64,000 nt of DNA from Adineta vaga (taxonomy: Eukaryota > Animalia > Rotifera), in assembly GCA_021613535.1 (NCBI GenBank), contig CP075494.1, positions 14,446,001 to 14,510,000 on the forward strand. Reading direction: 5' to 3'. A model generated the notes under the pieces. It searched no databases and was not told where the DNA came from. It saw only the letters and a program-made list of their open reading frames with translations. Below, piece by piece: positions 12,371-24,116 of the stretch. Within the stretch, counting starts at the first letter, position 1. The number at the start of each line of letters is the position of its first letter. The position numbers and the translations under genes were made by a program.

Positions 12371-13597
12371 CCCAGGTCGAACAATCCGGCGCGGAACTGG
12401 CCGGATCCAGAACATTCCGCCTATTACATGGAAGCAGGATTCCAGGCCGGAATCTTTCGGACCAAATCCGTTGATTTCCGTTCATATCCGCACGTAAAAT
12501 CTCGGAAACTGACGGAAAAAAACCGAAACATTCCGACCAGGAACCGCATATGCGGCATCCCATAGGAAACCAATAGATCCTACAGGAACATTCTGACGGT
12601 CGGAAACCCAAATTTTCCGTGATATTACCGCTTCTTTCCTTCCTCGTCGCATTCCTTCACTAATACCGCGTAACCCCCAAACGTGTAGTTTAATTCATCC
12701 ATCACCTTCAACAAACCTGCATGCCCAAACAACACCGCCTAAGACTGGCCTCTCGTCTGGATTTTAGAGCCGACTAACATCGGATTCTTAATCCAATCGT
12801 GGACACACGAAAAACAACCCTGGTGATGCGTCTGTTCGTTATATTTTGAGCCGATTTTAATCCTCTCAAAAATCCTATCACGAACTGACCAAAATAAGTT
12901 TTGAGAATTTTTCCAAAGTCATTCGTATATGGGAAGATGGAGTTGAGATATGATCTCATACAGTTTTGGACTATTTCAATAGTCAAAATAGGTTAATAAG
13001 GTGATATTAGTTGGACAAATAGAGAGGTATGATTTATTTCGTATTATAATAATATTATGATATAATTTTTTTAGAAGATATATTATTCATGAATTAGCGT
13101 GATGTGGGTAAGTCATGATTTTTTATGCGTTATATTTGAATAGTCTTCTTGTCTTTTATGTTGTAGGGTGTTATTTAGAACTTCACGGAAAGTATTTCGT
13201 TAGGTAAGTGCGTAGATGTTGCTGATTTTGATTGTTAACTTTGTTAACTGATGTTTGGATTTTATTTAGGTACATCGTCTCTCGATCTGTGAATTTTGTT
13301 TTAGTAAGTTAAAATTATATTGTGATTTACTCCGGCTTTTGTCGTAGGGGAATAATTTTTATGAAGTTTCGATCGGTCGGTTCCGGCTGGTTCCATTGAG
13401 AACCGTGTCCATGGCTTTACCCGGAATGAGACGGTTCCAGTTCCGAGAAATTCCGGTCTGGAATACTGCTTCCATTTTCCGGTCCTTTTCCTTTCGGCTC
13501 CTTTGGGATCTGGTCGGAACTGGACGGAATGAGGCAGAAAAGAGGTGCTTTCCTGCGGGTTCCGATCGGTTCCGGAGGCCGGAACGTTCGTCCTGGG
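12371..13597. mobile_element. 1.23-kb non-autonomous DNA transposon with imperfect TIRs and 2-bp TSD (CMC/EnSpm-like)
   Basis: Begins CCCAGGTCGAAC and ends GTTCGTCCTGGG, flanked by TC on both sides (12369-70 and 13598-99). GC-rich CCGG/TCCGG subterminal repeats surround an AT-rich core. Confidence 0.75.
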
Positions 13598-13704
13598 TCT
13601 CGCATCGTCAATTGTTCAGCTTCCACCGTACGAATTATCTAAAATATGAATGAACGTTGATGACATTTCTGACATTAAATATAGTGGAAAAGAAAACGAA
13701 AAAA

Positions 13705-13925
13705 CTATCGGATCTTATCGAATCCGCTGGGGAATTCGCCGGAAGTTACCGGAATCTTGGCAACAGGATTCCGACAAAAAAGGCATCGGATGTCGAAATA
13801 ACTAGGATCCTGTCGAAACCTCTGAGAATCTGACACTTTCCGACATCCGGGACCGCATATCGAAATCCTGTTGCCAGGATTCCGGCGAATTCACATCGGA
13901 TCCGACAGGGTGAGTTCGACCTGGG
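13705..13925. mobile_element. Truncated copy of the CCCAG-terminus element family
   Basis: Ends GTTCGACCTGGG. Internal inverted repeat GGAATCTTGGCAACAGGATT / AATCCTGTTGCCAGGATTCC. Another terminus fragment lies at 14241. Confidence 0.55.
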
Positions 13926-14701
13926 TACATATCCAATGAATTAAAAATGAACTATCCGATTTCATTGACTTTGTTATGAGAATAGGTCACTTACAACGTT
14001 TAATTCACATACGTTTTTTCAGTCTATTTCCGGTCTAATACGTGGTGATAATAAGAAACAAGTAACGCTCATCCGCAGGATTCGCTGACCCCTCCCTGAA
14101 AGAACTATAGTGATGATGAACGCATCGATATTCTTTAAAAAACTCTCTTAAAGAGAAGAAACACTCGTCAAAATTTCTTTTCTTGATTTTGAGATTTGTC
14201 AAAAAATATGCCCAGAAATCGAGATTTATTTAGACCCTAACCCAGGTCGACCGATCGGTACTAGTCGAACATTAAAAATACGTAAATTTGATAAATATAT
14301 AATATTATTAATTGTTTCTATCTATTCTTTGAAAGAAAAAAAGGAGTTTTACAAAACCTTTTTGGGTTCTGCAACATCTCCAGAACCAGAAAAAGTTCTG
14401 TTTTATTTATTTTGAACCAAAAGGGTTCTGCCCAAAAATACCCAGTTTGAAAGGGTTCGGTCTTATAATATGGAATCATAGAGATTTTTTTCTTCGACGT
14501 TACTAAATGTAAAGTTTCTTCTCTAAAATTCGCAACCTGATATAGCTGCCCCAGTTAATGTTGGAGTATCGTAAGTTTCCTCAACTGAAGAAGAGAGTCA
14601 CACACTCAAAAAATGTATATACGTTCGTTTGTTCATGCAAGTCAACAACAATTTAACAACTTTCTTTTCTCTTTTGAGTTTTGTCATAACAAAAAACGGA
14701 A

Positions 14702-14970
14702 ATGTTTTCGCCATTTCAAGTTGTCAATAACGATCTTAGGTATGAACTGAACAACTTAATGTTTTGCATCGACGATGATGAGAATCCAGTATCAGTATAT
14801 GATTATTCCAAGCAATTTTTCAGTCATCCAAATCTGAGGGAGGTTTTTCTCTTATTACTTACATGTAACAAAATCATGTTCAGGCCAGTTACAAGTTAAC
14901 AGAGAACGAATCTAATATAGCTCAAACTAACTTATATGTTATGTCCACAATAGAGGGTAGGAGTTGATCA
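14702..14970 (+). pseudogene. Probable hAT transposase C-terminal (dimerisation domain) remnant
   Basis: HPNLREVFLLLLT...PVTS resembles the hAT motif [FY]PNLxxLxxxxLTxPV[TS]S. The frame is disrupted immediately afterwards. Confidence 0.4.
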
Positions 14971-15529
14971 GCTCAAGTCCATGAACTCTGATGAAATGAA
15001 CTAAAGAACTATGCAAAAGTTTATCATTTCACCGAGCTCAATCTTTTAAAAATATTCTTTAAAAATAAAATGATCTTTTTCAGCGGTTTCTCTATTCGAT
15101 TATGTAGAGATATCACGCAGTCATCAACTGATAGTATGTAGGGTTATTTGTATACCCTTGAGCATAGAAGATATCTTTATATAATGAGACTAGCAGACAG
15201 GGACGGGCCGAGGATTTTATAATATCCGAAAATTTAACTTCAAAGCATGGGTCCCGCATGAAACTTATGAAAGATGATAAGTGACCCAAATGGTGACTTT
15301 TTACCAAAAACATTTTGTGATTGAAGTTTGTGAAAAAAAATTTTTTTAACTGCTACACCCAACTTTTGTTTTTGGTTTAAGCAGTACTCAGATTCTTAGA
15401 ATGTTATCGGAATCTACATCGAATTTCATCCACAGATTTCAAGTCTTTCAGAAGCTATCAAGAGATATATTCAATACGACTTGTTCAATCCCTCTTTCTA
15501 TTCGGACAGCTTTCGAAACTAAATATCAT

Positions 15530-15880
15530 ATGAAATATTTCTTATTGTTGTATAGGTATATATCGATATCTGATTAAGAGTAAGTAATATTTCAAATACG
15601 AAATGAAACATTCTCTATTATCATTTAGGTTTGTATAGATATGTGGGTAAAAATGAGTTATTTTCAAACAATATGTTAAATATTTATTGTTATCATTTCG
15701 GTTCATAGCCATATCTGATTAAAGTTCAGTGATATTTTGAATTTTAGATTAAATATTTTCTATTGTCATTTAGGTTCAGGTCGAAGTCTAACGAAATGTG
15801 AGTTATATTTTATATAGAAAACTAAATATTTTCTTCTTTTATATTTAGACCGATCTATATTGCAGAGAAATGGTAAGTGG
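15530..15880 (+). repeat. Degenerate ~73-bp tandem repeat, 5 units, each shaped as acceptor + 24-nt exon + donor
   Basis: 24-nt segments start at 15556, 15629, 15701, 15774 and 15849. They are bounded by AG and GTAAGT/GTGAGT in units 1, 4 and 5, while the sites are mutated in units 2 and 3. Confidence 0.6.
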
Positions 15881-15901
15881 GATATTAGAAACAAAATAAG
15901 T

Positions 15902-16173
15902 AGAATGATTTTCTTTTTATATCTATAGGTTGATTTGTACACGTATTCAAGTACTGCAAGTGCGTCTGTTTATATTACAAGGTCAAAAACAGACTGAGAA
16001 AGTGAATTAGGTTAGGGCTGAATTGAGCCAATCGGCAGCAAGCAAAAAGCGTGATTCGACTCTAGCTTAATTCACTTTTTCGGTCTATTTGAGAGCTTAA
16101 CATGAACAGACGCACTTGCAACACTGGAATATGTGTACAAATCAACCTAGATATAAAGAGAAAATAATTTTCT
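15902..16173. repeat. ~270-bp fold-back (palindromic MITE-like) element
   Basis: TAGGTTGATTTGTACAC...TGCAAGTGCGTCTGTT...AAAGTGAATTAG is mirrored by TAATTCACTTT...AACAGACGCACTTGCA...GTGTACAAATCAACCTA. Confidence 0.8.
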
Positions 16174-18996
16174 GAAAAACCATTTAACACACCTTTTATG
16201 TCAGACTGAACCTTATTTTTGTATAGAATAATGAAGAGTTCTGTTAGGTTTTAACAGAACCCTCTATGAGCCAGAACCTTTTTGTGGGTTCTGAATTTTA
16301 CCAGCGGGCCGAACCCCTAAAAAGGTTCTGGAAAACTCCTTTTTTATTTTCGGATTTGAATTTATAAGATGCATATGTCAAATTAATCAACATCATGTCA
16401 TATAAATTTGGTTGTGTAGGACCATATTGACGTAATAAATTTGCTGATAAATAACGAAATTATGGAACACACGATAATAAACAAATCAATTGATTACAAT
16501 ATATTGAATTATCAACGAGTATAAATATTCCATTGAGCTATATGAGAAAGTCGTAATGTATTGTGTATATTTCGGAAAGTATAGAAGCAATTGATCTCAA
16601 ATTGTGTCGAAGGAAAATAATATGAAAGTGTTCCACAACAGATTTTTAATGTTGAGAGAATCTGAAATAAAACATAGTTTCTCGTAATATTAACGTAAGA
16701 TACGATCAAATGAGAATTACATAGGTTTCGAAAAAAACAGTCGAGTATTCCAGAAGGTCTTCTATTGTAAAACTAGATTTACATAAGTGAATAGACAACA
16801 TTATTCTATAGAAGAATAAAATAATAGGGATCTATCGAAAGACGATAATGAGAAGGATATATCACATGATGCTTTAAACAAATATTACCTTCAAAGACAA
16901 TGATCAAAAAAGATTAGAACACTTATGATAATTAAATGAAAATAGAGTTGCTCTAGTAAATTACTGCTTGTCTATAAATAAGAAACAAAATGAGTAGAAA
17001 TATATATGAGATTTACGGAATATTCATTTTGAATTTTGTTCTCATTTCGTAAGTCTAAATATGGAAGTTTTTTTTATCTCTTTTGCCATGAAAGTAGAAA
17101 AGAAAAACTTCTTCTACGCAAGACATCAACATTATTATTTGTTTTCATTAGAATTTAAAACATTGAAAAAAGAACGAACAATCATATACTCTATAATTTT
17201 GGTCAAAATGTATATGTTTTCTGATAGAAGAGAAAGCTTTTATCTGGCAACATCAAGTATTAAAAAATGAAGAAAAAGAGTTTATTGAATTTTTTGTATG
17301 GATTCAATAGTTATTTACCTAATTATGACAACGGATAATATCCGTTTACAATCGATTATTTTAAAATTTACAAGCTCGTCTTTGAATGACGTTTGATAAT
17401 GTCTTCATTTTTATCTTGGTTATGATGCAACACTCGTTTGAATTCTCATTGTTTGGATGCTGTGAAATTGTGCAAAGGTTACACGTAACTATTATATGAA
17501 TTCGATATTTTTTACAAATATATTTAGAGCATTGCAATCAAAATTGATTAAATCAAACCAAACAAAGTTTATCATTAATTTTGTTATCTCTTTTCGATTA
17601 ATGTTAGATATTATTTGTTAATTCACGTCAGATATAATCCTATCTTTGTTAAAATATCAATATTATATGAAAGAAAATTTCCATTCAGTGTAAATATGAT
17701 AATTATATACTTCATCAATATATTCATAGTCAAAAAGTCAGTGATCAATATGCTATTGGTTCAATGAAACAAATGTCATGATACATGCGTCGATGGTGTA
17801 TTTTAGAAGAATGTTCAGGACAATCGATGAATTCAGAAAGGCGGTTCACATTGATTTCTCAAATAAACAAAATCGTCAAATTAGATAAAGAAACTATTTT
17901 GGATGTACATTCAACAACTAAACGTTCATTACCATGTGTAATTATTTGAATGCACAGCATGAAAAGCTTCGATAGATCTAGTATAGTCGGTTTCATCGAC
18001 ACCGATGATGAATATATTCAAAAAGAAATATGTGTAAACTTAAGACAGAACGACTTTACCACTCGCGAATTAATCATACTCTTGTAATTCTCAGAATGAT
18101 AATGAATAGGAAAGGGAATATAAGTACGGGTCACTATGTAAACATGAAACACTCTTTGTGTTTACAAATGCATTTCGCCGTCTTTCATTGAAGTTCGAAT
18201 ATATCGGAAGTTGGATCCAGATGCGATTTATATCCTAAATTGTGTCTCTACACATTTGTTAGTTGAGACTGAGATACACTCTTTTCTCTAAAACTTTCTT
18301 TTTTTATCTTGAAAGATGTACGAATACAAAATATCTTTCTATCATTAGACATCAAACGTCAAATAAAAGATGCAACTAAATAAAGTTGTCAAACTCGTCA
18401 TCCACTTTATCTTGACGTCAACCCCAACTCTCTAACGTTACAAATATAGTAACGATTTGTGAGACACTCAGACTTTAAACTAAACTCTCTATTATGAGAA
18501 ATATTCAAAATAAAGTTCGAAAGAATATTTTGCTACGTTTTCATGCACAACAGAATGTTTAATAAATGATTTTCCAGTCGTTCCCAATAGATCAGCGATG
18601 GGAATAAGTCCAGCGGACTCATTAAAAGGCTCATAAGACGCATCGACGGTCGTCCTTCTTCTTCATAACATTTCCACTATTGAAAATTTTTCAGAAGACA
18701 TTATATTAAGAGTAGACAGTTTCACAAAATATCGTATGATACCCATCAAACTTCACCTAATAAATTATAGTGCATTTCAAACACGGGATTTCGCTATTTC
18801 GGACATACACAAATCATCAACTTAGATGACGAACACATCTCACACGGTCGGGAATCGAGAGCTTGAAACAAAACACGTTATTGTACGATAAATACGACTT
18901 CGAAGCACAATGTATATTCATTTCTCACCACATCGGTTTCCTCTAAAATAATTCTCCAGCAAAGAGCACTAAAAAACAATGTCCCTCGAGTCCAAA

Positions 18997-21442
18997 CTAC
19001 CACGTCAACCTATTTCCAAAAGTATTTCGGAGATAGCTTCTTTCTCGAGCACCGATTCCATTGATCCCGAGATTTAGTGTGGTGAGTGTCTACAGAGGAG
19101 AGATAGTACGGATGTGTCAATTAGGACAAGAGCGAATGAGTATTACCGTGTTTATTCGCAAGGCATCACCAATATGTTGTGCTCCTTGATGGCCGATTCG
19201 ATTGCACCGGAGATCTAGTGTGGTGAGTGTCTATAAACGAGAGAATATGGATGTGTCAATTAGGACAAGAGTGAATGAGTATTACTGTGTTTATTCGCAA
19301 GGCATCAAAAATATGTTGTGCTCCTTGATCACCGATTTGATTGCCCCCGATATCTAGTGTGGTGAGTGTCTATAGAGGAGAGAGAGCATGGATGTGTCAA
19401 TCCGGACAAGAGCGAATGAGTATTACTGTGTTTATTCGCAAGGCATCACCAATATGTTGTGCTCCTTGATCACCGATTTTATTGTACCCGATATGTAGTG
19501 CGGTGAGTGTCTATAGAGGAGAGAGAGCATGGATGTGTCAATCCGGACAAGAGCGAATGAGTATTACTGTGTTTATTCGCAAGGCATCAAACATATGTTG
19601 TGCTCCTTGATCACCGATTTCATTGTTCTCGAGATTAAGCGTGGTGAGTGTCTATAGAGGAGAGAGAGCATGGATGTGTCAATCAGGAGAAGAGCGAATG
19701 AGTATTACTGTGTTTATTCGCAAGGCATCACCAATATGTTGTGCTCCTTGATCACCGATTTTATTGTACCCGATATGTAGTGCGGTGAGTGTCTATAGAG
19801 GAGAGAGAGCATGGATGTGTCAATCCGGACAAGAGCGAATGAGTATTACTGTGTTTATTCGCAAGGCATCACAAATATGTTGTGCTCCTTGATCACCGAT
19901 TTTATTGTACCCGATATCTAGTGCGGTGAGTGTCTATAGACGAGAGAGAGCATGGATGTGTCAATCAGGAGAAGAGCGAATGAGTATTACTGTGTTTATT
20001 CGCAAGGCATCACAAATATGTCGTGCTCCTTGATCGCTGATTTCATTGTTCTCGAGATTAAGCGTGGTGAGTGTCTATAGACGAGAGAGAGCATGGATGT
20101 GTCAATCAGGAGAAGAGCGAATGAGTGTTACTGTGTTTATTCCCAAGGCATCAAAAATATGTTGTGCTCCTTGATCACCGATTTGATTGCCCCCGATATC
20201 TAGTGTGGTGAGTGTCTATAGAGGAGAGAGAGCATGGATGTGTCAATCCGGACAAGAGCGAATGAGTATTACTGTGTTTATTCGCAAGGCATCACCAATA
20301 TGTTGTGCTCCTTGATCACCGATTTTATTGTACCCGATATGTAGTGCGGTGAGTGTCTATAGAGGAGAGAGAGCATGGATGTGTCAATCAGGAGAAGAGC
20401 GAATGAGTATTACTGTGTTTATTCGCAAGGCATCACAAATATGTTGTGCTCCTTGATCACCGATTTGACTGTACCAGAGATTTAGTGTGGTGAGTGTCTA
20501 TAAACGAGAGAATATGGATGTGTCAATCAGGAGAAGAGCGAATGAGTATTACCGTGTTTATTCGCAAGGCATCACCAATATGTTGTGCTCCTTGATGGCC
20601 GATTTGATTGTACCCGAGATCTAGCGTGGTGAGTGTCTATATAGAGAATATTTCTTTCGAGAATGTGGGTAAAGCAATCGGAACTTTAGAGTAATGTTTT
20701 TCAATTAGATATAGCATTATACAAGAGGTGTTGCGGTAGTGTGTGAAAGTGTTCGATCTGGGTTCATGGAGTGAAAAGAGAAATCGTTGCTTGTCTGATG
20801 ATTCCTGAGGTAATGTGCGAATCGTAGGATGATTAGAGTGAGTAGTGTACTGAAGGTAGTGATACTTGTTTATTTCGAATGGTGTTGGATTGTTATTTTT
20901 AGATTTGGTTTGCGAAAGATCATATTGAATCGGGGCAGAATATAAAACAATTCACTTTATTTTATTCGGTGGGTTCATAGATAGCTGTTGCATTGTTTAA
21001 TAGTTGCATGGAGACATTTGTTTGAAACGGGAAAGGTGTTTTTATGCGGCGGTTTTATTCTTGTGTGGCGCATGAGTGCGCGCTGAATAAGATATATATT
21101 ATATGTGCATAGATAGAAAAGAACAGGTGAGAGGAAGTGTGGTTTTAATAGCATGAGTCAATATTGTGTTTGGTTGACTCATGGAAATTGCTTCGGAATT
21201 GTGAAATTTGTTTTTTCTTTAAGTGAACTGATTAAGTTAGATATTGCGAGGCTCATATGTGCTTGAACGGATGAGAAAATAGGTAAAGCACTTTGCAAAC
21301 TTACTTGATATGGATGATAAATATTCAGAATTTGATTAAAACGTTGGCAAACATTTTGCATTGAGCAAAATAGTGTAAAAGCAGACAGATGATCCAAAAT
21401 TCGATAGACGAGTTCAATCGGTAATGTTGAAAATGTGTACAT
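18997..21442 (-). CDS. F-box + ribonuclease-inhibitor/NLRC3-type LRR protein (~384 aa), one LRR per exon
   Basis: Exon 1 (21442-21305) reads MYTFSTLPIELVYRILDHL...VCQRFNQILNIYHPYQ (F-box) then GTAAGT. Eleven 84-nt phase-0 exons follow (20636-20553, 20497-20414, 20356-20273, 20215-20132, 20074-19991, 19933-19850, 19792-19709, 19651-19568, 19510-19427, 19369-19286, 19230-19147), with consensus TLTxLxLxxNxIGDQGAQHIxDALRINT. The terminal exon 19089-18997 reads TLTTLNLGINGIGARERSYLRNTFGNRLTW*. All are stop-free with canonical GT-AG. Confidence 0.88.
19050..20640. repeat. Tandem array of 139-141-bp units (84-nt LRR exon + 55/57-nt intron), 11 full units plus a partial one
   Basis: Directly visible periodic recurrence of TGTTTATTCGCAAGGCATCA...GTGCTCCTTGAT...GGTGAGTGTCTAT...GGATGTGTCAAT. 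Confidence 0.98.
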
Positions 21443-22637
21443 ATTCGCTTTAAATTCCACAGAAGTTTGTTGAGAATACAAGCTATTGAAATATATTTTG
21501 TTTGTTATGAAAAGAAATTCGCTTTACTGATAGTATTGTATTTCTGTTATTCGAAAAAGATAATGAAATTTGACGATTTCAACAAAAGCGAATAGCTCGT
21601 TTATGCAGAAAGATGGCGTTAACGTATGTACTGAGTGTAGTTTTGTCTAACGTGTGTGATTATCAGTGTCAGTATACACTCAAGATACGTATTTTTCATT
21701 AGTAATTTTTTGAGTTTTACAAAAGAGTTTGTTTTAAGAAAGGATATTTTTGCATGTGATATTCAACAAAAGTTCAATCAGAAAAGGAAATCTTTGCGTG
21801 TAGATACGGATAGTCTCTACTTTTCACGCTCACGCTCCATACCCTCATAAACCATAATTTCATTCTCTTAGTTCGACGTAAGGCAATTTTTATTTCAAAC
21901 ACGTCTATCCTTAAAGATCTTAACAAGAAAATTATTTGAATTAAAGAAAACAAAGCCGGTTCATCTTATCGTGATGTGCGAGATAAATGTTTTGTATGAA
22001 CAACTGGTGGTGTATCAAATATTCTCAAAAGAAAAAGAAAACACATGAAAATATAAACTAAGTTCGAGTCTGACTGTCGTCACCGAGTTAACTGAGACTG
22101 TTTCATGTCTATGCCATCGTATCTCTAAGATGTTCTTATATGATTTGCTTATTCCCCTACGTTTTTCATTGATTCCAATAGTGTTCAAACTAGACAAATT
22201 TTACTGTACTGTATTTTTCTCAAACCTGCTACGAGTTCGATTCTACCTATGTGTTCATTTATTGAATTATCATCTCTAGAATGATCAATAGTTTCTATTT
22301 CAATATTACTAAACTTTTAATGATTGTATGAATAACTAACGACCGACTGATTGTAATCTCATATTATATCTATCGAAATCGCGTACTTAACTCGTACTGA
22401 AGGGTAGCGCAATATTTTGATCTTGTGCAGCCTTTAACTTTTAACCCTTGATCCTATCCTTACTCTATTCTCGGTTTCCGATGTTTGAGACAGTCTTGAA
22501 GAAAATGGTTTTTTGACCTTTGACACTGACACAAAGCGCACAGAAACTTTTTTTCCATATGACGCTCCTTTCTGTAGAAGGAATAAGGTGTGGGTGTAAG
22601 TGTTCCTTGATAGAGTACGCACATACATACATCCACA

Positions 22638-22768
22638 CAAGGGGAAAAGGCGGATCCGGGACCCTCATAGTTTCTGCGATCACATAGTTCATGATGACCA
22701 ATGATAACCCATGAGGGTCCGAAAGTTTTATAGGATTTGGGTATCCAGGATCCGCTTTTTCCCCCTTG
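22638..22768. mobile_element. 131-bp MITE with CAAGGGG(G)AAAA-type TIRs
   Basis: CAAGGGGAAAAGGCGGATCC ... GGATCCGCTTTTTCCCCCTTG, flanked by CA/CA. It lies inside a further GGTGTGGGT/ACCCACACC inverted pair. Confidence 0.65.
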
Positions 22769-24116
22769 CAGACCCACACCCTCAACTTTTGCTGAAAAAA
22801 CATTTGTTCAATTAACCCAGTAGCTTTATTAAATAATTCACAGTCAGAATTTTTTCTTTTATGCTTAATAACAGGTTATTTTCAGTTTCGCAATAATTAT
22901 AATAATTGATTAGAATTATGAAAAGCTAACATGAGATTTGAAACCCTCGACTTCGATTACTTTTGGATAAATCATTTACAGATGATTATTAGTAAATTTT
23001 CATGAATTTTTATATTGTTGCCATCTGACTGGATTAGACAAATAAGAAATAACAATTAATTAATTCTATCGAAAATTTCTGAAAAAAAGAAATAAAAAAA
23101 ATAAGAATGAATCATATCTTTTCGATATCTTAACCAATCAAAGAATGGATTAATACTGGAAATTTTATTTGCGTAAAAAATATATCAGTTAGACTAAATT
23201 AGATTTGAATATTTATTTCGTTTACGAAAGTAATAAATCATCATTGTTCGAAATTTTAAAAAATCGTTTTTTAGTTCATAATTCTCATGCAGAATCGTTT
23301 TTGAAAGAAAAATTTCCAACTAGTTTTGTATTATTTGATTGAAAATCTTTCCCATATTTTTGTTCAAGTTGATTTCAACTTCAGAAAGCTTAGGCTTGGA
23401 TCACATATGAAAAGAAAACGAACAAGACGACATCAAGTCAAAGGTTTATTCCAGAAACAAATGATCAAAGAAAGAGCAAACGAACCATGAAGATGATTGT
23501 TGCTGAGGAATTTTGTATTTTTCGGTGATCTGCTCGACCATTTCACGAAGACAACCAGCATTATTGTTACGCAATTGTTCTTCATTCTAGAAAGCATAAA
23601 CGGTGTTGTAAATATCGAATAAATTTTCAACAAACTAATGATACGACAGTAGTTTACAAATAGTAGACAGGCATCAGTACAATCCGGCCGACTATGTAGA
23701 GAATAATTTTACCGTTTATTGCTCAAATCAGCATCAACTAAAAGAATCCATACCCAGTTCGACTGGCACTGGATGCATGTCTGGCATATAGTTATCTCAA
23801 TCGAATTTTCTTCTCGGCGATCAAACGGTCAAACTATATAGTGAATAAATAATTTGAATCGAATGAAAAACATGAATAGGTCATAAATAGATTAAATACA
23901 ATAAAGGTTTTATTTCTTTGAGATAATTCACTATCTTTAGAAAAGAATTGAGAGCCGTCAGAGAATACACTACGCTCTCAAATGATCATTACGCTTCAGG
24001 AAAATGAAAATTTTTCCTGTCAACTTTTCGGCCACATTGAATAAGAATGTTTGTGTATGATTATTAGAGTTCGTCATCAGATTTCGTACTTAATCATACA
24101 GTAACTGTTTTGATCA

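What the first reader, a model, noticed from the sequence alone, without database searches (positions are those of the whole stretch)
18997..21442. F-box gene built from a cassette array of single-LRR, phase-0 exons: candidate modular intracellular recognition system
Seen: an F-box exon is followed by 11 tandem exon+intron units and a terminal unit. Each 84-nt exon encodes exactly one 28-aa LRR, all junctions are phase 0 and all splice sites are intact. The array is invisible to the ORF track and looks like satellite DNA. Established: F-box proteins are SCF E3 ligase substrate adaptors and LRR solenoids bind via the concave beta-sheet. Inference: any cassette can be skipped, duplicated, deleted or swapped without frameshift. 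Unequal crossover, gene conversion or exon skipping could therefore yield many binding surfaces coupled directly to ubiquitination, a VLR/Dscam-like logic for targeting pathogen or transposon proteins, possibly in an asexual animal.
Basis: partly seen in the sequence, partly recalled or inferred. Interest (0 to 1): 0.88.

Follow-up and report, generated by a model that had tools for sequence, protein, structure and literature searches.

The report
Transposon-borne rotifer F-box LRR-cassette gene
This is a real, spliced gene of the asexual rotifer Adineta vaga that joins a ubiquitin-ligase docking module (F-box) to eleven one-exon leucine-rich repeats. It is one of at least 40 fast-diversifying copies that were spread around the chromosome ends on a 9-kb transposon-like element, and its targets are unknown.

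Summary
On the minus strand there is an F-box exon (21442-21305), a 668-nt intron, eleven 84-nt phase-0 exons that each encode one 28-aa RI-type LRR, separated by 55-57-nt GT..AG introns, and a 93-nt terminal exon ending at 18997. RNA contigs show four of the predicted junctions.

The gene is not unique. The genome (Adineta vaga) holds about 40 close copies and at least 150 related F-box exons. In 21 copies analysed, repeat number runs from 1 to 23, and 255 of 256 cassette exons are intact against about 53 stops expected under neutrality. Predicted binding-face codons diverge three times faster than introns, while scaffold codons and the F-box are under purifying selection.

The window copy lacks about 220 nt at its 5' end.

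Modular cassettes and germline diversification fit the data. VLR- or Dscam-like somatic or isoform diversity has no support, and Skp1 binding and targets are untested.

This scan had already flagged paralogues of this gene on other DNA of the same genome, and their follow-ups reached similar conclusions.

The parts
21305..21442 (-). Exon 1: start codon and F-box (46 codons), donor GTAAGT, phase 0
   Evidence: Pfam PF00646 at 26.3 bits, above the 20.5 cut-off. The splice joint 20636>21305 is present in two RNA runs. dN/dS is 0.22 among 21 copies.
20637..21304 (-). Intron 1, 668 nt, far longer than the cassette introns. Its length is kept in paralogues (666-670 nt) and is similar in two other Adineta species (734 and 753 nt), but its sequence is not conserved between species.
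   Evidence: RNA contigs also lie colinear with the genome over 20607-21042, which is unexplained.
19147..20636 (-). Eleven cassettes. The 84-nt exons are 20636-20553, 20497-20414, 20356-20273, 20215-20132, 20074-19991, 19933-19850, 19792-19709, 19651-19568, 19510-19427, 19369-19286 and 19230-19147. Each encodes one 28-aa RI-type LRR. The introns are 55 or 57 nt.
   Evidence: Pfam LRR_6 scores 18.9-27.5 bits per single exon, and 8 of 11 reach the 23.4 cut-off. Three intron joints are seen in RNA.
18997..19089 (-). Terminal exon: a partial twelfth LRR plus a short C-terminal tail, with stop TAG at 18999-18997
   Evidence: The tail motif is shared by paralogues.
18860..18996 (-). 3' untranslated region (approximate end)
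   Evidence: RNA contigs reach 18860-18880, and depth is zero in 18500-18850.
14047..23065 (-). Carrier element, 9.0 kb in this copy: 1.62 kb upstream of the ATG, the gene, and 4.95 kb downstream. It is 93-99% identical to 20 or more dispersed copies. This copy lacks the first 217-220 nt that the others have.
14047..14100 (-). 3' terminus of the carrier element: a 16-nt stretch inverse-complementary to the family's 5' end, then about 31 nt with a small stem-loop. Homology to all copies stops here.
   Evidence: Six copies end at the same base and continue into unrelated DNA. The 24-nt core motif occurs 55 times in the genome and 0 times in the reversed control, with variation concentrated in the loop. 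The same end is found in A. ricciae.

Best explanation
The locus is an expressed member of an Adineta vaga family of FBXL-like genes. A conserved N-terminal F-box, presumed to dock on Skp1 in an SCF ubiquitin ligase, is spliced directly to a ribonuclease-inhibitor-type LRR solenoid that presumably binds the substrate. Each LRR is one 84-nt phase-0 exon inside a 141-bp exon-plus-intron unit. Unequal recombination and gene conversion between units therefore add, remove and reshuffle repeats in frame over germline (clonal-lineage) time. Selection keeps the scaffold and splice sites and favours change at the exposed strand and loop residues. Copy number grew because the whole gene, with 1.6-1.8 kb upstream and about 5 kb downstream, lies within a non-autonomous transposon-like element that has inserted 20 or more times, mostly in distal chromosome regions. 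Shown: gene structure, splicing, family size, cassette turnover, the selection pattern, and the sharp shared element ends. Inferred: SCF function, a varied and antagonistic target set, and actual transposition.
For: Structure and splicing.

Family: 302 unit matches at 25 or more loci. 150 F-box exon matches out of 234 candidates, about 40 of them at 85% or more.

In the window gene plus 20 fetched paralogues, every copy has the same exon 1 and donor, an intron 1 of 666-670 nt in 20 of the 21, and 1-23 cassettes; 255 of 256 exons are intact. Neutral simulation at the intron rate predicts 53 stops and 77 splice-site losses.

Divergence from consensus:
- intron interior: 0.087
- third codon positions: 0.079
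- positions 1+2 of the a priori face codons (3, 4, 6, 8, 9, 11): 0.260
- positions 1+2 of the other codons: 0.040
Mann-Whitney p = 3e-4.

For the eight codons picked as most variable (3, 4, 6, 8, 9, 11, 14, 26), dN/dS is about 2.0; for the remaining 20 it is 0.29. For the F-box it is 0.22.

There are 205 distinct units among 256. Units 3 and 9 of this gene are identical, yet no unit is colinear with the nearest paralogue, whose flanks are 97-99% identical.

An AlphaFold model of a relative places strands at unit positions 4-8 and helices at 13-26, with pLDDT 85-95.

The same exon architecture is found in A. ricciae and A. steineri, and the same domain pair in Rotaria.

Carrier element.
Against: - No experiment or prediction here shows Skp1 binding or any substrate.
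- The dN/dS of about 2 was measured on codons picked after seeing which varied most. Only the divergence comparison used a set fixed beforehand from the LRR motif.
- Repeat units share a tangled history of conversion, so pairwise statistics are not independent.
- RNA evidence comes from short k-mer contigs. With 40 paralogues some contigs could stem from other copies, although the 668-nt joint and a 436-nt exact contig fit this copy.
- The element's class is unresolved. No autonomous partner, target-site duplication or empty site was found, so transposition is inferred from its ends alone.
Confidence: 0.65

Rival explanations
1. Selfish cargo: the F-box-LRR protein serves the transposon that carries it. 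It might, for example, direct host silencing or defence proteins to the proteasome, as viral and bacterial F-box mimics do, and it would diversify in an arms race with the host.
For: Every close copy analysed lies inside the same element with sharp ends. The coding sequence is kept intact in all copies. The flanks carry no other long ORF. The best solved-structure match of a relative's LRRs is a chain named GALA protein; from my own knowledge, GALA proteins are bacterial F-box-LRR effectors.
Against: In A. ricciae an 880-bp element with the same ends lies beside, not around, an F-box-LRR gene. The gene family therefore exists apart from the element and is older than this capture. F-box-LRR genes of this type occur across bdelloids. 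Nothing identifies a host target.
Confidence: 0.15
2. Within-animal diversity generator: exon skipping, mutually exclusive splicing or somatic rearrangement of cassettes yields many receptors from one locus.
For: Every cassette is phase 0 and 84 nt, so any subset would stay in frame. Two RNA joints link the terminal exon to exon 10 or exon 1 instead of exon 11.
Against: Those two joints rest on 21 letters that are identical in several exons and in paralogues. The three informative cassette joints all link neighbouring exons. The germline gene is complete. The DNA run laid shows no joint of that kind in the array; its one irregular record lies between 19625 and 19210 at low depth and was not followed up. 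Diversity is already encoded in 40 or more germline copies.
Confidence: 0.05
3. An LRR protein whose F-box is vestigial: the solenoid acts as a binder or inhibitor, like ribonuclease inhibitor, without ubiquitin-ligase coupling.
For: The LRRs are of the RI type, and relatives match ribonuclease inhibitor, LRRC34 and NLR LRRs. The F-box exon alone finds no solved F-box chain with significance.
Against: The F-box exon passes Pfam's curated threshold. It is the most conserved part of the gene (96% identity, dN/dS 0.22) and is kept in Adineta and Rotaria relatives.
Confidence: 0.08
4. Non-functional repeat: a decaying pseudogene or satellite that only looks like exons.
For: It looks like satellite DNA to ORF and repeat finders and is part of a multicopy element.
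Against: It is spliced in RNA. One broken exon in 256 is seen against about 53 expected. Scaffold codons are under purifying selection. The architecture is conserved across species.
Confidence: 0.02

Closest known systems
FBXL-type F-box proteins (Skp2, FBXL2, yeast Grr1, plant TIR1/COI1): SCF substrate receptors
   Same: An N-terminal F-box followed by an LRR solenoid, with the presumed logic of docking on Skp1 and binding the substrate on the LRRs.
   Different: From my own knowledge, the classical FBXL repeats are of a different, cysteine-containing LRR subtype. Here the repeats are 28-aa RI-type, start right after the 46-residue F-box exon with no linker, are near-identical to one another, and number 1-23 among paralogues.
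Expanded, positively selected F-box families of Caenorhabditis (PMC8120010) and F-box genes shaped by transposons (PMC12062965)
   Same: A large lineage-specific F-box expansion whose substrate-binding part evolves fast, proposed to face pathogens or other antagonists, with an association with transposable elements.
   Different: From my own knowledge the nematode families use FTH/FBA or, per PMC12062965, HTH domains rather than LRR cassettes. There the transposons donate a protein domain or nearby regulatory sites. Here a whole intact gene appears to ride inside the element.
Exonic modularity of RI-type LRRs in vertebrate NLRs such as NLRP3 (PMC6642158)
   Same: RI-type LRRs are encoded by uniform in-frame exons. 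[quoted passage not shown]
   Different: NLRP3 exons are 171 bp and hold two repeats with the border inside the strand. Here each exon is 84 bp and holds one repeat with the border just before the strand. The introns are 55-57 nt and are homogenised together with the exons. There is no NACHT domain.
Lamprey VLR and insect Dscam diversity systems
   Same: LRR (VLR) or cassette (Dscam) modules that could be combined in many ways.
   Different: VLRs are assembled somatically from flanking cassettes into an incomplete germline gene. Dscam uses mutually exclusive exon clusters. Neither feature is seen here: the gene is complete and neighbouring exons are joined.
Helitron-like elements of group 2 (Helitron2/Helentron), known for carrying host genes (PMC11417382)
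   Same: There is no target-site duplication. A T lies at both junctions. A 16-nt stretch at the 5' end is inverse-complementary to a stretch just before a small 3' stem-loop. Non-autonomous relatives of different sizes share the ends.
   Different: No RepHel gene with these ends was found. The stem-loop is weak (about -2.6 kcal/mol). The exact 5' base is uncertain. Membership is therefore open.

Membership tests
F-box domain (Pfam PF00646) | Sequence match to the F-box profile above the curated threshold | tested here: met
   Exon 1 scores 26.3 bits against a cut-off of 20.5, residues 4-41. UniProt names the relatives 'F-box domain-containing protein'.
F-box domain (functional) | Binds Skp1 and assembles into an SCF ligase | not testable with these tools
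   This needs a binding assay. Skp1 genes are present in the genome.
RI-type leucine-rich repeat (Pfam LRR_6, PF13516) | A 28-29-residue period with the LxxLxLxxNxL strand motif followed by a helix | tested here: met
   All 11 exons match LRR_6, and 8 reach the 23.4-bit cut-off on their own. The model of a relative shows a strand/helix period of 28. PDB relatives include ribonuclease inhibitor.
FBXL architecture | F-box and LRRs in one polypeptide | tested here: met
   An RNA joint links exon 1 to the first LRR exon in phase 0. Annotated relatives carry the same junction.
NLR (NACHT-LRR) receptors | A NACHT/NB-ARC nucleotide-binding domain upstream of the LRRs | tested here: not met
   The only coding exon upstream of the LRRs is the 46-codon F-box exon.
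VLR-like somatic assembly | An incomplete germline gene completed from flanking LRR cassettes | tested here: not met
   The germline gene is complete and intact. The flanks hold no free cassettes.
Dscam-like mutually exclusive splicing | Only one exon of a cluster is included per transcript | tested here: not met
   RNA joints link exons 1-2, 2-3 and 4-5.
Helitron-like element, group 2 | Sharp ends shared by dispersed copies, with no target-site duplication | tested here: met
   For four copies both flanks were read and showed no duplication.
Helitron-like element, group 2 | Short terminal inverted repeat plus a 3' stem-loop, and insertion between T and T | tested here: inconclusive
   14 of 16 bases are complementary, but the 3' arm is subterminal. 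The stem-loop is weak. T lies at both junctions in all copies but could belong to the element.
Helitron-like element, group 2 | An autonomous RepHel-encoding partner with the same ends | tested here: inconclusive
   There are 24 Helitron_like_N matches in the genome. Only one lies within 9 kb of a 3'-end motif (C2:81295 against C2:89484).

The most novel reading that the evidence does not exclude
A mobile, self-amplifying library of ubiquitin-ligase receptors. A transposon carries a complete F-box-LRR gene whose one-exon cassettes recombine and diversify after each insertion. Either an asexual animal gains a spreading germline repertoire of intracellular recognition proteins, or the element carries its own counter-defence against host silencing.
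Probability: 0.2. Interest if true: 0.85.

Novelty: new variant of a known kind. Interest (0 to 1): 0.6.

Why it matters
Bdelloid rotifers have persisted without conventional sex, and how they keep pace with pathogens and transposons is an open question. Here is a family of 40 or more intact, expressed F-box-LRR genes. Its binding-face residues change three times faster than neutral sites. Its repeat arrays turn over faster than their flanks. It was multiplied by a mobile element. That makes it a concrete, testable candidate for germline-encoded variable recognition coupled to protein degradation. It also gives a clean natural example of concerted evolution and diversifying selection acting on the same 141-bp unit. 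The library searched holds no description of the family beyond a table entry, 'Leucine rich repeat protein', in a 2010 paper (PMC2861651).

Tried and rejected
- Complex prediction with the F-box exon and the largest Skp1 exon of this genome (L065:1336-1611) returned 'no answer' (score 0.30, mark 0.34). It counts neither for nor against binding.
- phmmer of the F-box exon against solved structures gave only a non-significant hit (E = 0.88).
- The look-up of encoding contigs for an A. vaga protein found nothing.
- Rfam found nothing in 13500-23600.
- The bacterial promoter and terminator scan is uninformative for a eukaryote.
- No LTR or full-length terminal inverted repeat was found, although that call scanned the two flanks separately. 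The two ends were compared only by eye.
- Flank ORFs of 40-45 aa or more were listed but not searched against protein families.
- Intron 1 shows no cross-species sequence conservation.
- P0003, a 1246-aa 'hit' with 16 F-box-like stretches, is a translated tandem repeat and was discarded.
- The exon-skipping joints were rejected as evidence because their 21-letter anchors are not unique.
- The joined, spliced protein of this gene was deliberately not built or searched. Exons were searched one by one by reference, and natural relatives from the databases stood in for the whole protein.
Full report
**What is there**

Tandem Repeats Finder reports a single array at 19050-20641: period 141, 11.3 copies, 91% matches.

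On the minus strand every unit splits into two parts:
- an 84-nt exon, preceded by AG and followed by GTAA(T/C)A;
- a 55- or 57-nt intron ending in a pyrimidine run and TATAG.

The eleven exons all translate without stops to 28-residue repeats of the form TLTxLxLxxNxIGxQGAQHIxDALRINT. A twelfth, terminal exon (19089-18997) starts like a repeat and then runs into a short tail and a TAG stop.

Upstream, an ATG at 21442 opens a 46-codon exon that ends in a GTAAGT donor at 21305/21304. Pfam calls it an F-box at 26.3 bits against a cut-off of 20.5. Each LRR exon matches Pfam LRR_6, and eight of the eleven pass the family threshold as single 28-residue pieces. All junctions are phase 0. No ORF of 60 aa or more covers the array. 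The one addition is a 668-nt intron between the F-box exon and the first cassette.

**Is it expressed and spliced?**

I laid three runs that behave as RNA and one DNA run on 18500-22000. The RNA-like runs have zero depth in both flanks (18500-18850 and 21425-22000).

They carry joints with CT..AC ends (GT..AG on the minus strand) that skip exactly:
- 668 nt (20636>21305);
- 55 nt (20497>20553);
- 57 nt (20356>20414);
- 57 nt (20074>20132).

The DNA run has none of these. These are k-mer contigs, so they cannot give isoform structure or expression level.

Two further joints link the terminal exon to the end of exon 10 or exon 1. They rest on 21 letters shared by several exons and by paralogues, so I do not count them as exon skipping.

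RNA contigs also run colinear with the genome over 20607-21042, the 3' two thirds of intron 1. I cannot explain this. The frame is closed by the TAG of the acceptor, so such a transcript would not encode the repeats.

**Whose genome, and how many copies**

The assembly has six contigs and 100.8 Mb, and the window is C5:14446001-14510000. A database protein labelled Adineta vaga lies on a contig of exactly the length of C4.

- The 141-bp unit gives 302 matches at 25 or more loci.
- The F-box exon gives 150 scored matches out of 234 candidates, about 40 of them at 85% or more.
- The DNA run piles 10-100 times more summed contig depth on the array than on the flanks.

I fetched 20 paralogues. All have the same exon 1 and donor. 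All but one have an intron 1 of 666-670 nt; the exception is 1089 nt. Each then carries 1 to 23 cassettes. Of 256 cassette exons, 255 have intact AG/GT and open frames.

**Selection**

Across 199 units in register, amino-acid diversity varies sharply by position:

| Position | Diversity |
|---|---|
| 9 | 0.83 |
| 8 | 0.80 |
| 11 | 0.66 |
| 6 | 0.55 |
| 14 | 0.52 |
| Scaffold residues (L2, L5, N10, I12, A17, I20, L24, N27) | 0.06 or less |

I fixed a class of codons beforehand from the LxxLxLxxNxL motif (codons 3, 4, 6, 8, 9, 11). Divergence from the consensus is then:

| Site class | Divergence |
|---|---|
| Positions 1+2 of the a priori face codons | 0.260 |
| Intron interiors | 0.087 |
| Third codon positions | 0.079 |
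| Positions 1+2 of all other codons | 0.040 |

Nei-Gojobori estimates give dN/dS of about 2.0 at the eight most variable codons (3, 4, 6, 8, 9, 11, 14 and 26, picked after inspecting the variation) and 0.29 at the other 20. For the F-box exon the value is 0.22.

Mutating the consensus exon at the intron rate predicts about 53 stops and 77 splice-site losses in 256 exons. One of each is seen, both in the same unit.

Introns are not specially homogeneous. They vary like synonymous sites, and both are kept similar by concerted evolution.

An AlphaFold model of a natural A. ricciae relative (F-box plus six repeats) folds the repeats with pLDDT 85-95. Strands fall at unit positions 4-8 and helices at 13-26. 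Positions 6 and 8 therefore point out of the concave sheet, and positions 9 and 11 sit in the loop that follows. This is the usual LRR ligand face (established knowledge of LRR structure).

**Cassette turnover**

- The nearest paralogue, 242 kb away, is 97-99% identical in the upstream region, intron 1 and 4.7 kb of 3' flank.
- It nevertheless has 10 units rather than 11, and no unit-by-unit colinearity: best matches are 89-98% and off the diagonal.
- Within this gene, units 3 and 9 are identical and units 6 and 7 are 99% like them.
- Among 256 units there are 205 distinct protein sequences and 103 combinations at positions 6, 8, 9 and 11. None of this gene's eleven units recurs in the other 20 genes.

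Arrays are thus remodelled much faster than their surroundings, in frame. This is what unequal exchange between phase-0 units predicts.

**The carrier element**

Homology among copies does not stop at the gene.
- It runs 1.62 kb upstream of the ATG, to window 23065.
- It runs 4.95 kb downstream of the stop, to window 14047, at 93-99% identity.

At the 3' end, the window copy and five others finish on the same bases and continue into unrelated sequence. At the 5' end, eleven other copies share a further 217-220 nt and then diverge from one another. The window copy lacks that piece and abuts unique DNA.

Sixteen complete elements measure 8.4-11.4 kb, according to their cassette number.

The first 16-18 nt of the element are inverse-complementary (14 of 16) to a stretch about 31 nt before the 3' end. 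The tail after that stretch holds a small stem-loop.

The 24-nt core of that tail occurs 55 times in the genome and never in the reversed control. The loop reads TAC in the F-box copies and AAA or AGA in most of the others. Coordinates suggest shorter elements of about 1.4 and 3.8 kb with the same ends. An 880-bp one lies next to an F-box-LRR gene in A. ricciae.

The flanks hold no long ORF, no LTR and no Rfam family. Thirty-two of the 41 best F-box hits lie in the distal fifth of a chromosome arm (p = 8e-7).

I read this as a non-autonomous transposon that captured a complete F-box-LRR gene. Its features recall group-2 Helitron-like elements as described in PMC11417382, but I found no RepHel partner and no empty site. 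The class, and transposition itself, therefore remain inferences.

**Relatives and literature**

Annotated proteins of A. ricciae, A. steineri and Rotaria magnacalcarata, named only 'F-box domain-containing protein', have the same F-box spliced straight onto RI-type repeats.

| Species | F-box exon | Intron 1 | Cassette exon | Cassette intron |
|---|---|---|---|---|
| A. ricciae | 138 nt | 734 nt | 84 nt | 57 nt |
| A. steineri | 141 nt | 753 nt | 84 nt | 58 nt |

The exon plan therefore predates these species.

One A. vaga member was deposited in 2010 as 'leucine rich repeat containing protein', with intron 1 read through. The paper mentions it only as the neighbourhood of a Hebe retrotransposon (PMC2861651). 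Full-text searches for bdelloid or Adineta vaga together with F-box found no study of the family.

Known parallels:
- positively selected F-box expansions in Caenorhabditis (PMC8120010);
- transposon contributions to F-box genes (PMC12062965);
- the strict exon modularity of RI-type LRRs in NLRs, which that paper links to alternative splicing and to VLRs (PMC6642158).

**Verdict**

The gene is real, expressed and under selection. The cassette design demonstrably allows in-frame gain, loss and shuffling over evolutionary time.

The idea of a recognition family coupled to ubiquitination is the best reading, but it rests on domain identity and selection pattern, not on any binding data. Nothing supports diversity generated within an animal.

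The transposon-like carrier is the most unexpected element. It opens a second reading in which the gene serves the element rather than the host.

Earlier follow-ups in this scan, on paralogues elsewhere in the genome, reached the same main conclusions. I saw them after my own tests.

The spliced protein of this locus was not assembled or searched as a whole. Exons were used one by one, by reference.

Noticed in passing
window 20607-21042: Two RNA-like runs have contigs exactly colinear with the genome from LRR exon 1 into the 3' two thirds of intron 1, stopping near 21040. There is no depth over 21074-21190. This could be an internal start, partial intron retention, an antisense RNA or a k-mer break; a DNA contig also ends at 21040.
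   Followed up: partly
window 19089>19286 and 19089>20553 (joints): RNA contigs join the terminal exon to an exon ending in ...ACACA (exons 2-10) or to exon 1. This could be cassette skipping, but the 21-letter anchors are shared by several exons and by paralogues.
   Followed up: partly
window 15902-16173 and 15521-15849: Inside the element's 3' flank there is a nested 270-bp palindrome (arms of 76 and 45 nt) and three degenerate direct repeats of about 111 nt. Both are conserved in other copies.
   Followed up: no
window 12371-13597: A 1.2-kb stretch just outside the element is 100% identical to C4:15039432-15040658. It is either another very recent mobile element or a duplication.
   Followed up: no
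L063:4015-4894 (Adineta ricciae): An 880-bp element with the same 5' and 3' ends as the A. vaga carrier lies between two tandem F-box-LRR genes. The end sequences are therefore older than the species split and exist without the gene as cargo.
   Followed up: partly
L064:6001-11563 (Adineta steineri, P0134) and P0153 (A. vaga ADD91459): Public gene models of relatives look wrong. P0134 fuses the F-box-LRR gene to PDZ exons across a 3.1-kb 'intron', and P0153 reads through intron 1.
   Followed up: partly
G000 C2:81295 and C2:89484: One Helitron-like Rep match lies 8 kb upstream of a diverged copy of the element's 3' motif, on the same strand. It is a candidate autonomous relative, or a chance neighbour in a subtelomeric region.
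   Followed up: no
RI-type LRR arrays of bdelloids are also fused to other domains (ADP-ribosyltransferase, GPCR, B-box). Close LRR matches include Legionellaceae and Rickettsiales proteins and a solved 'GALA protein'.
   Followed up: no
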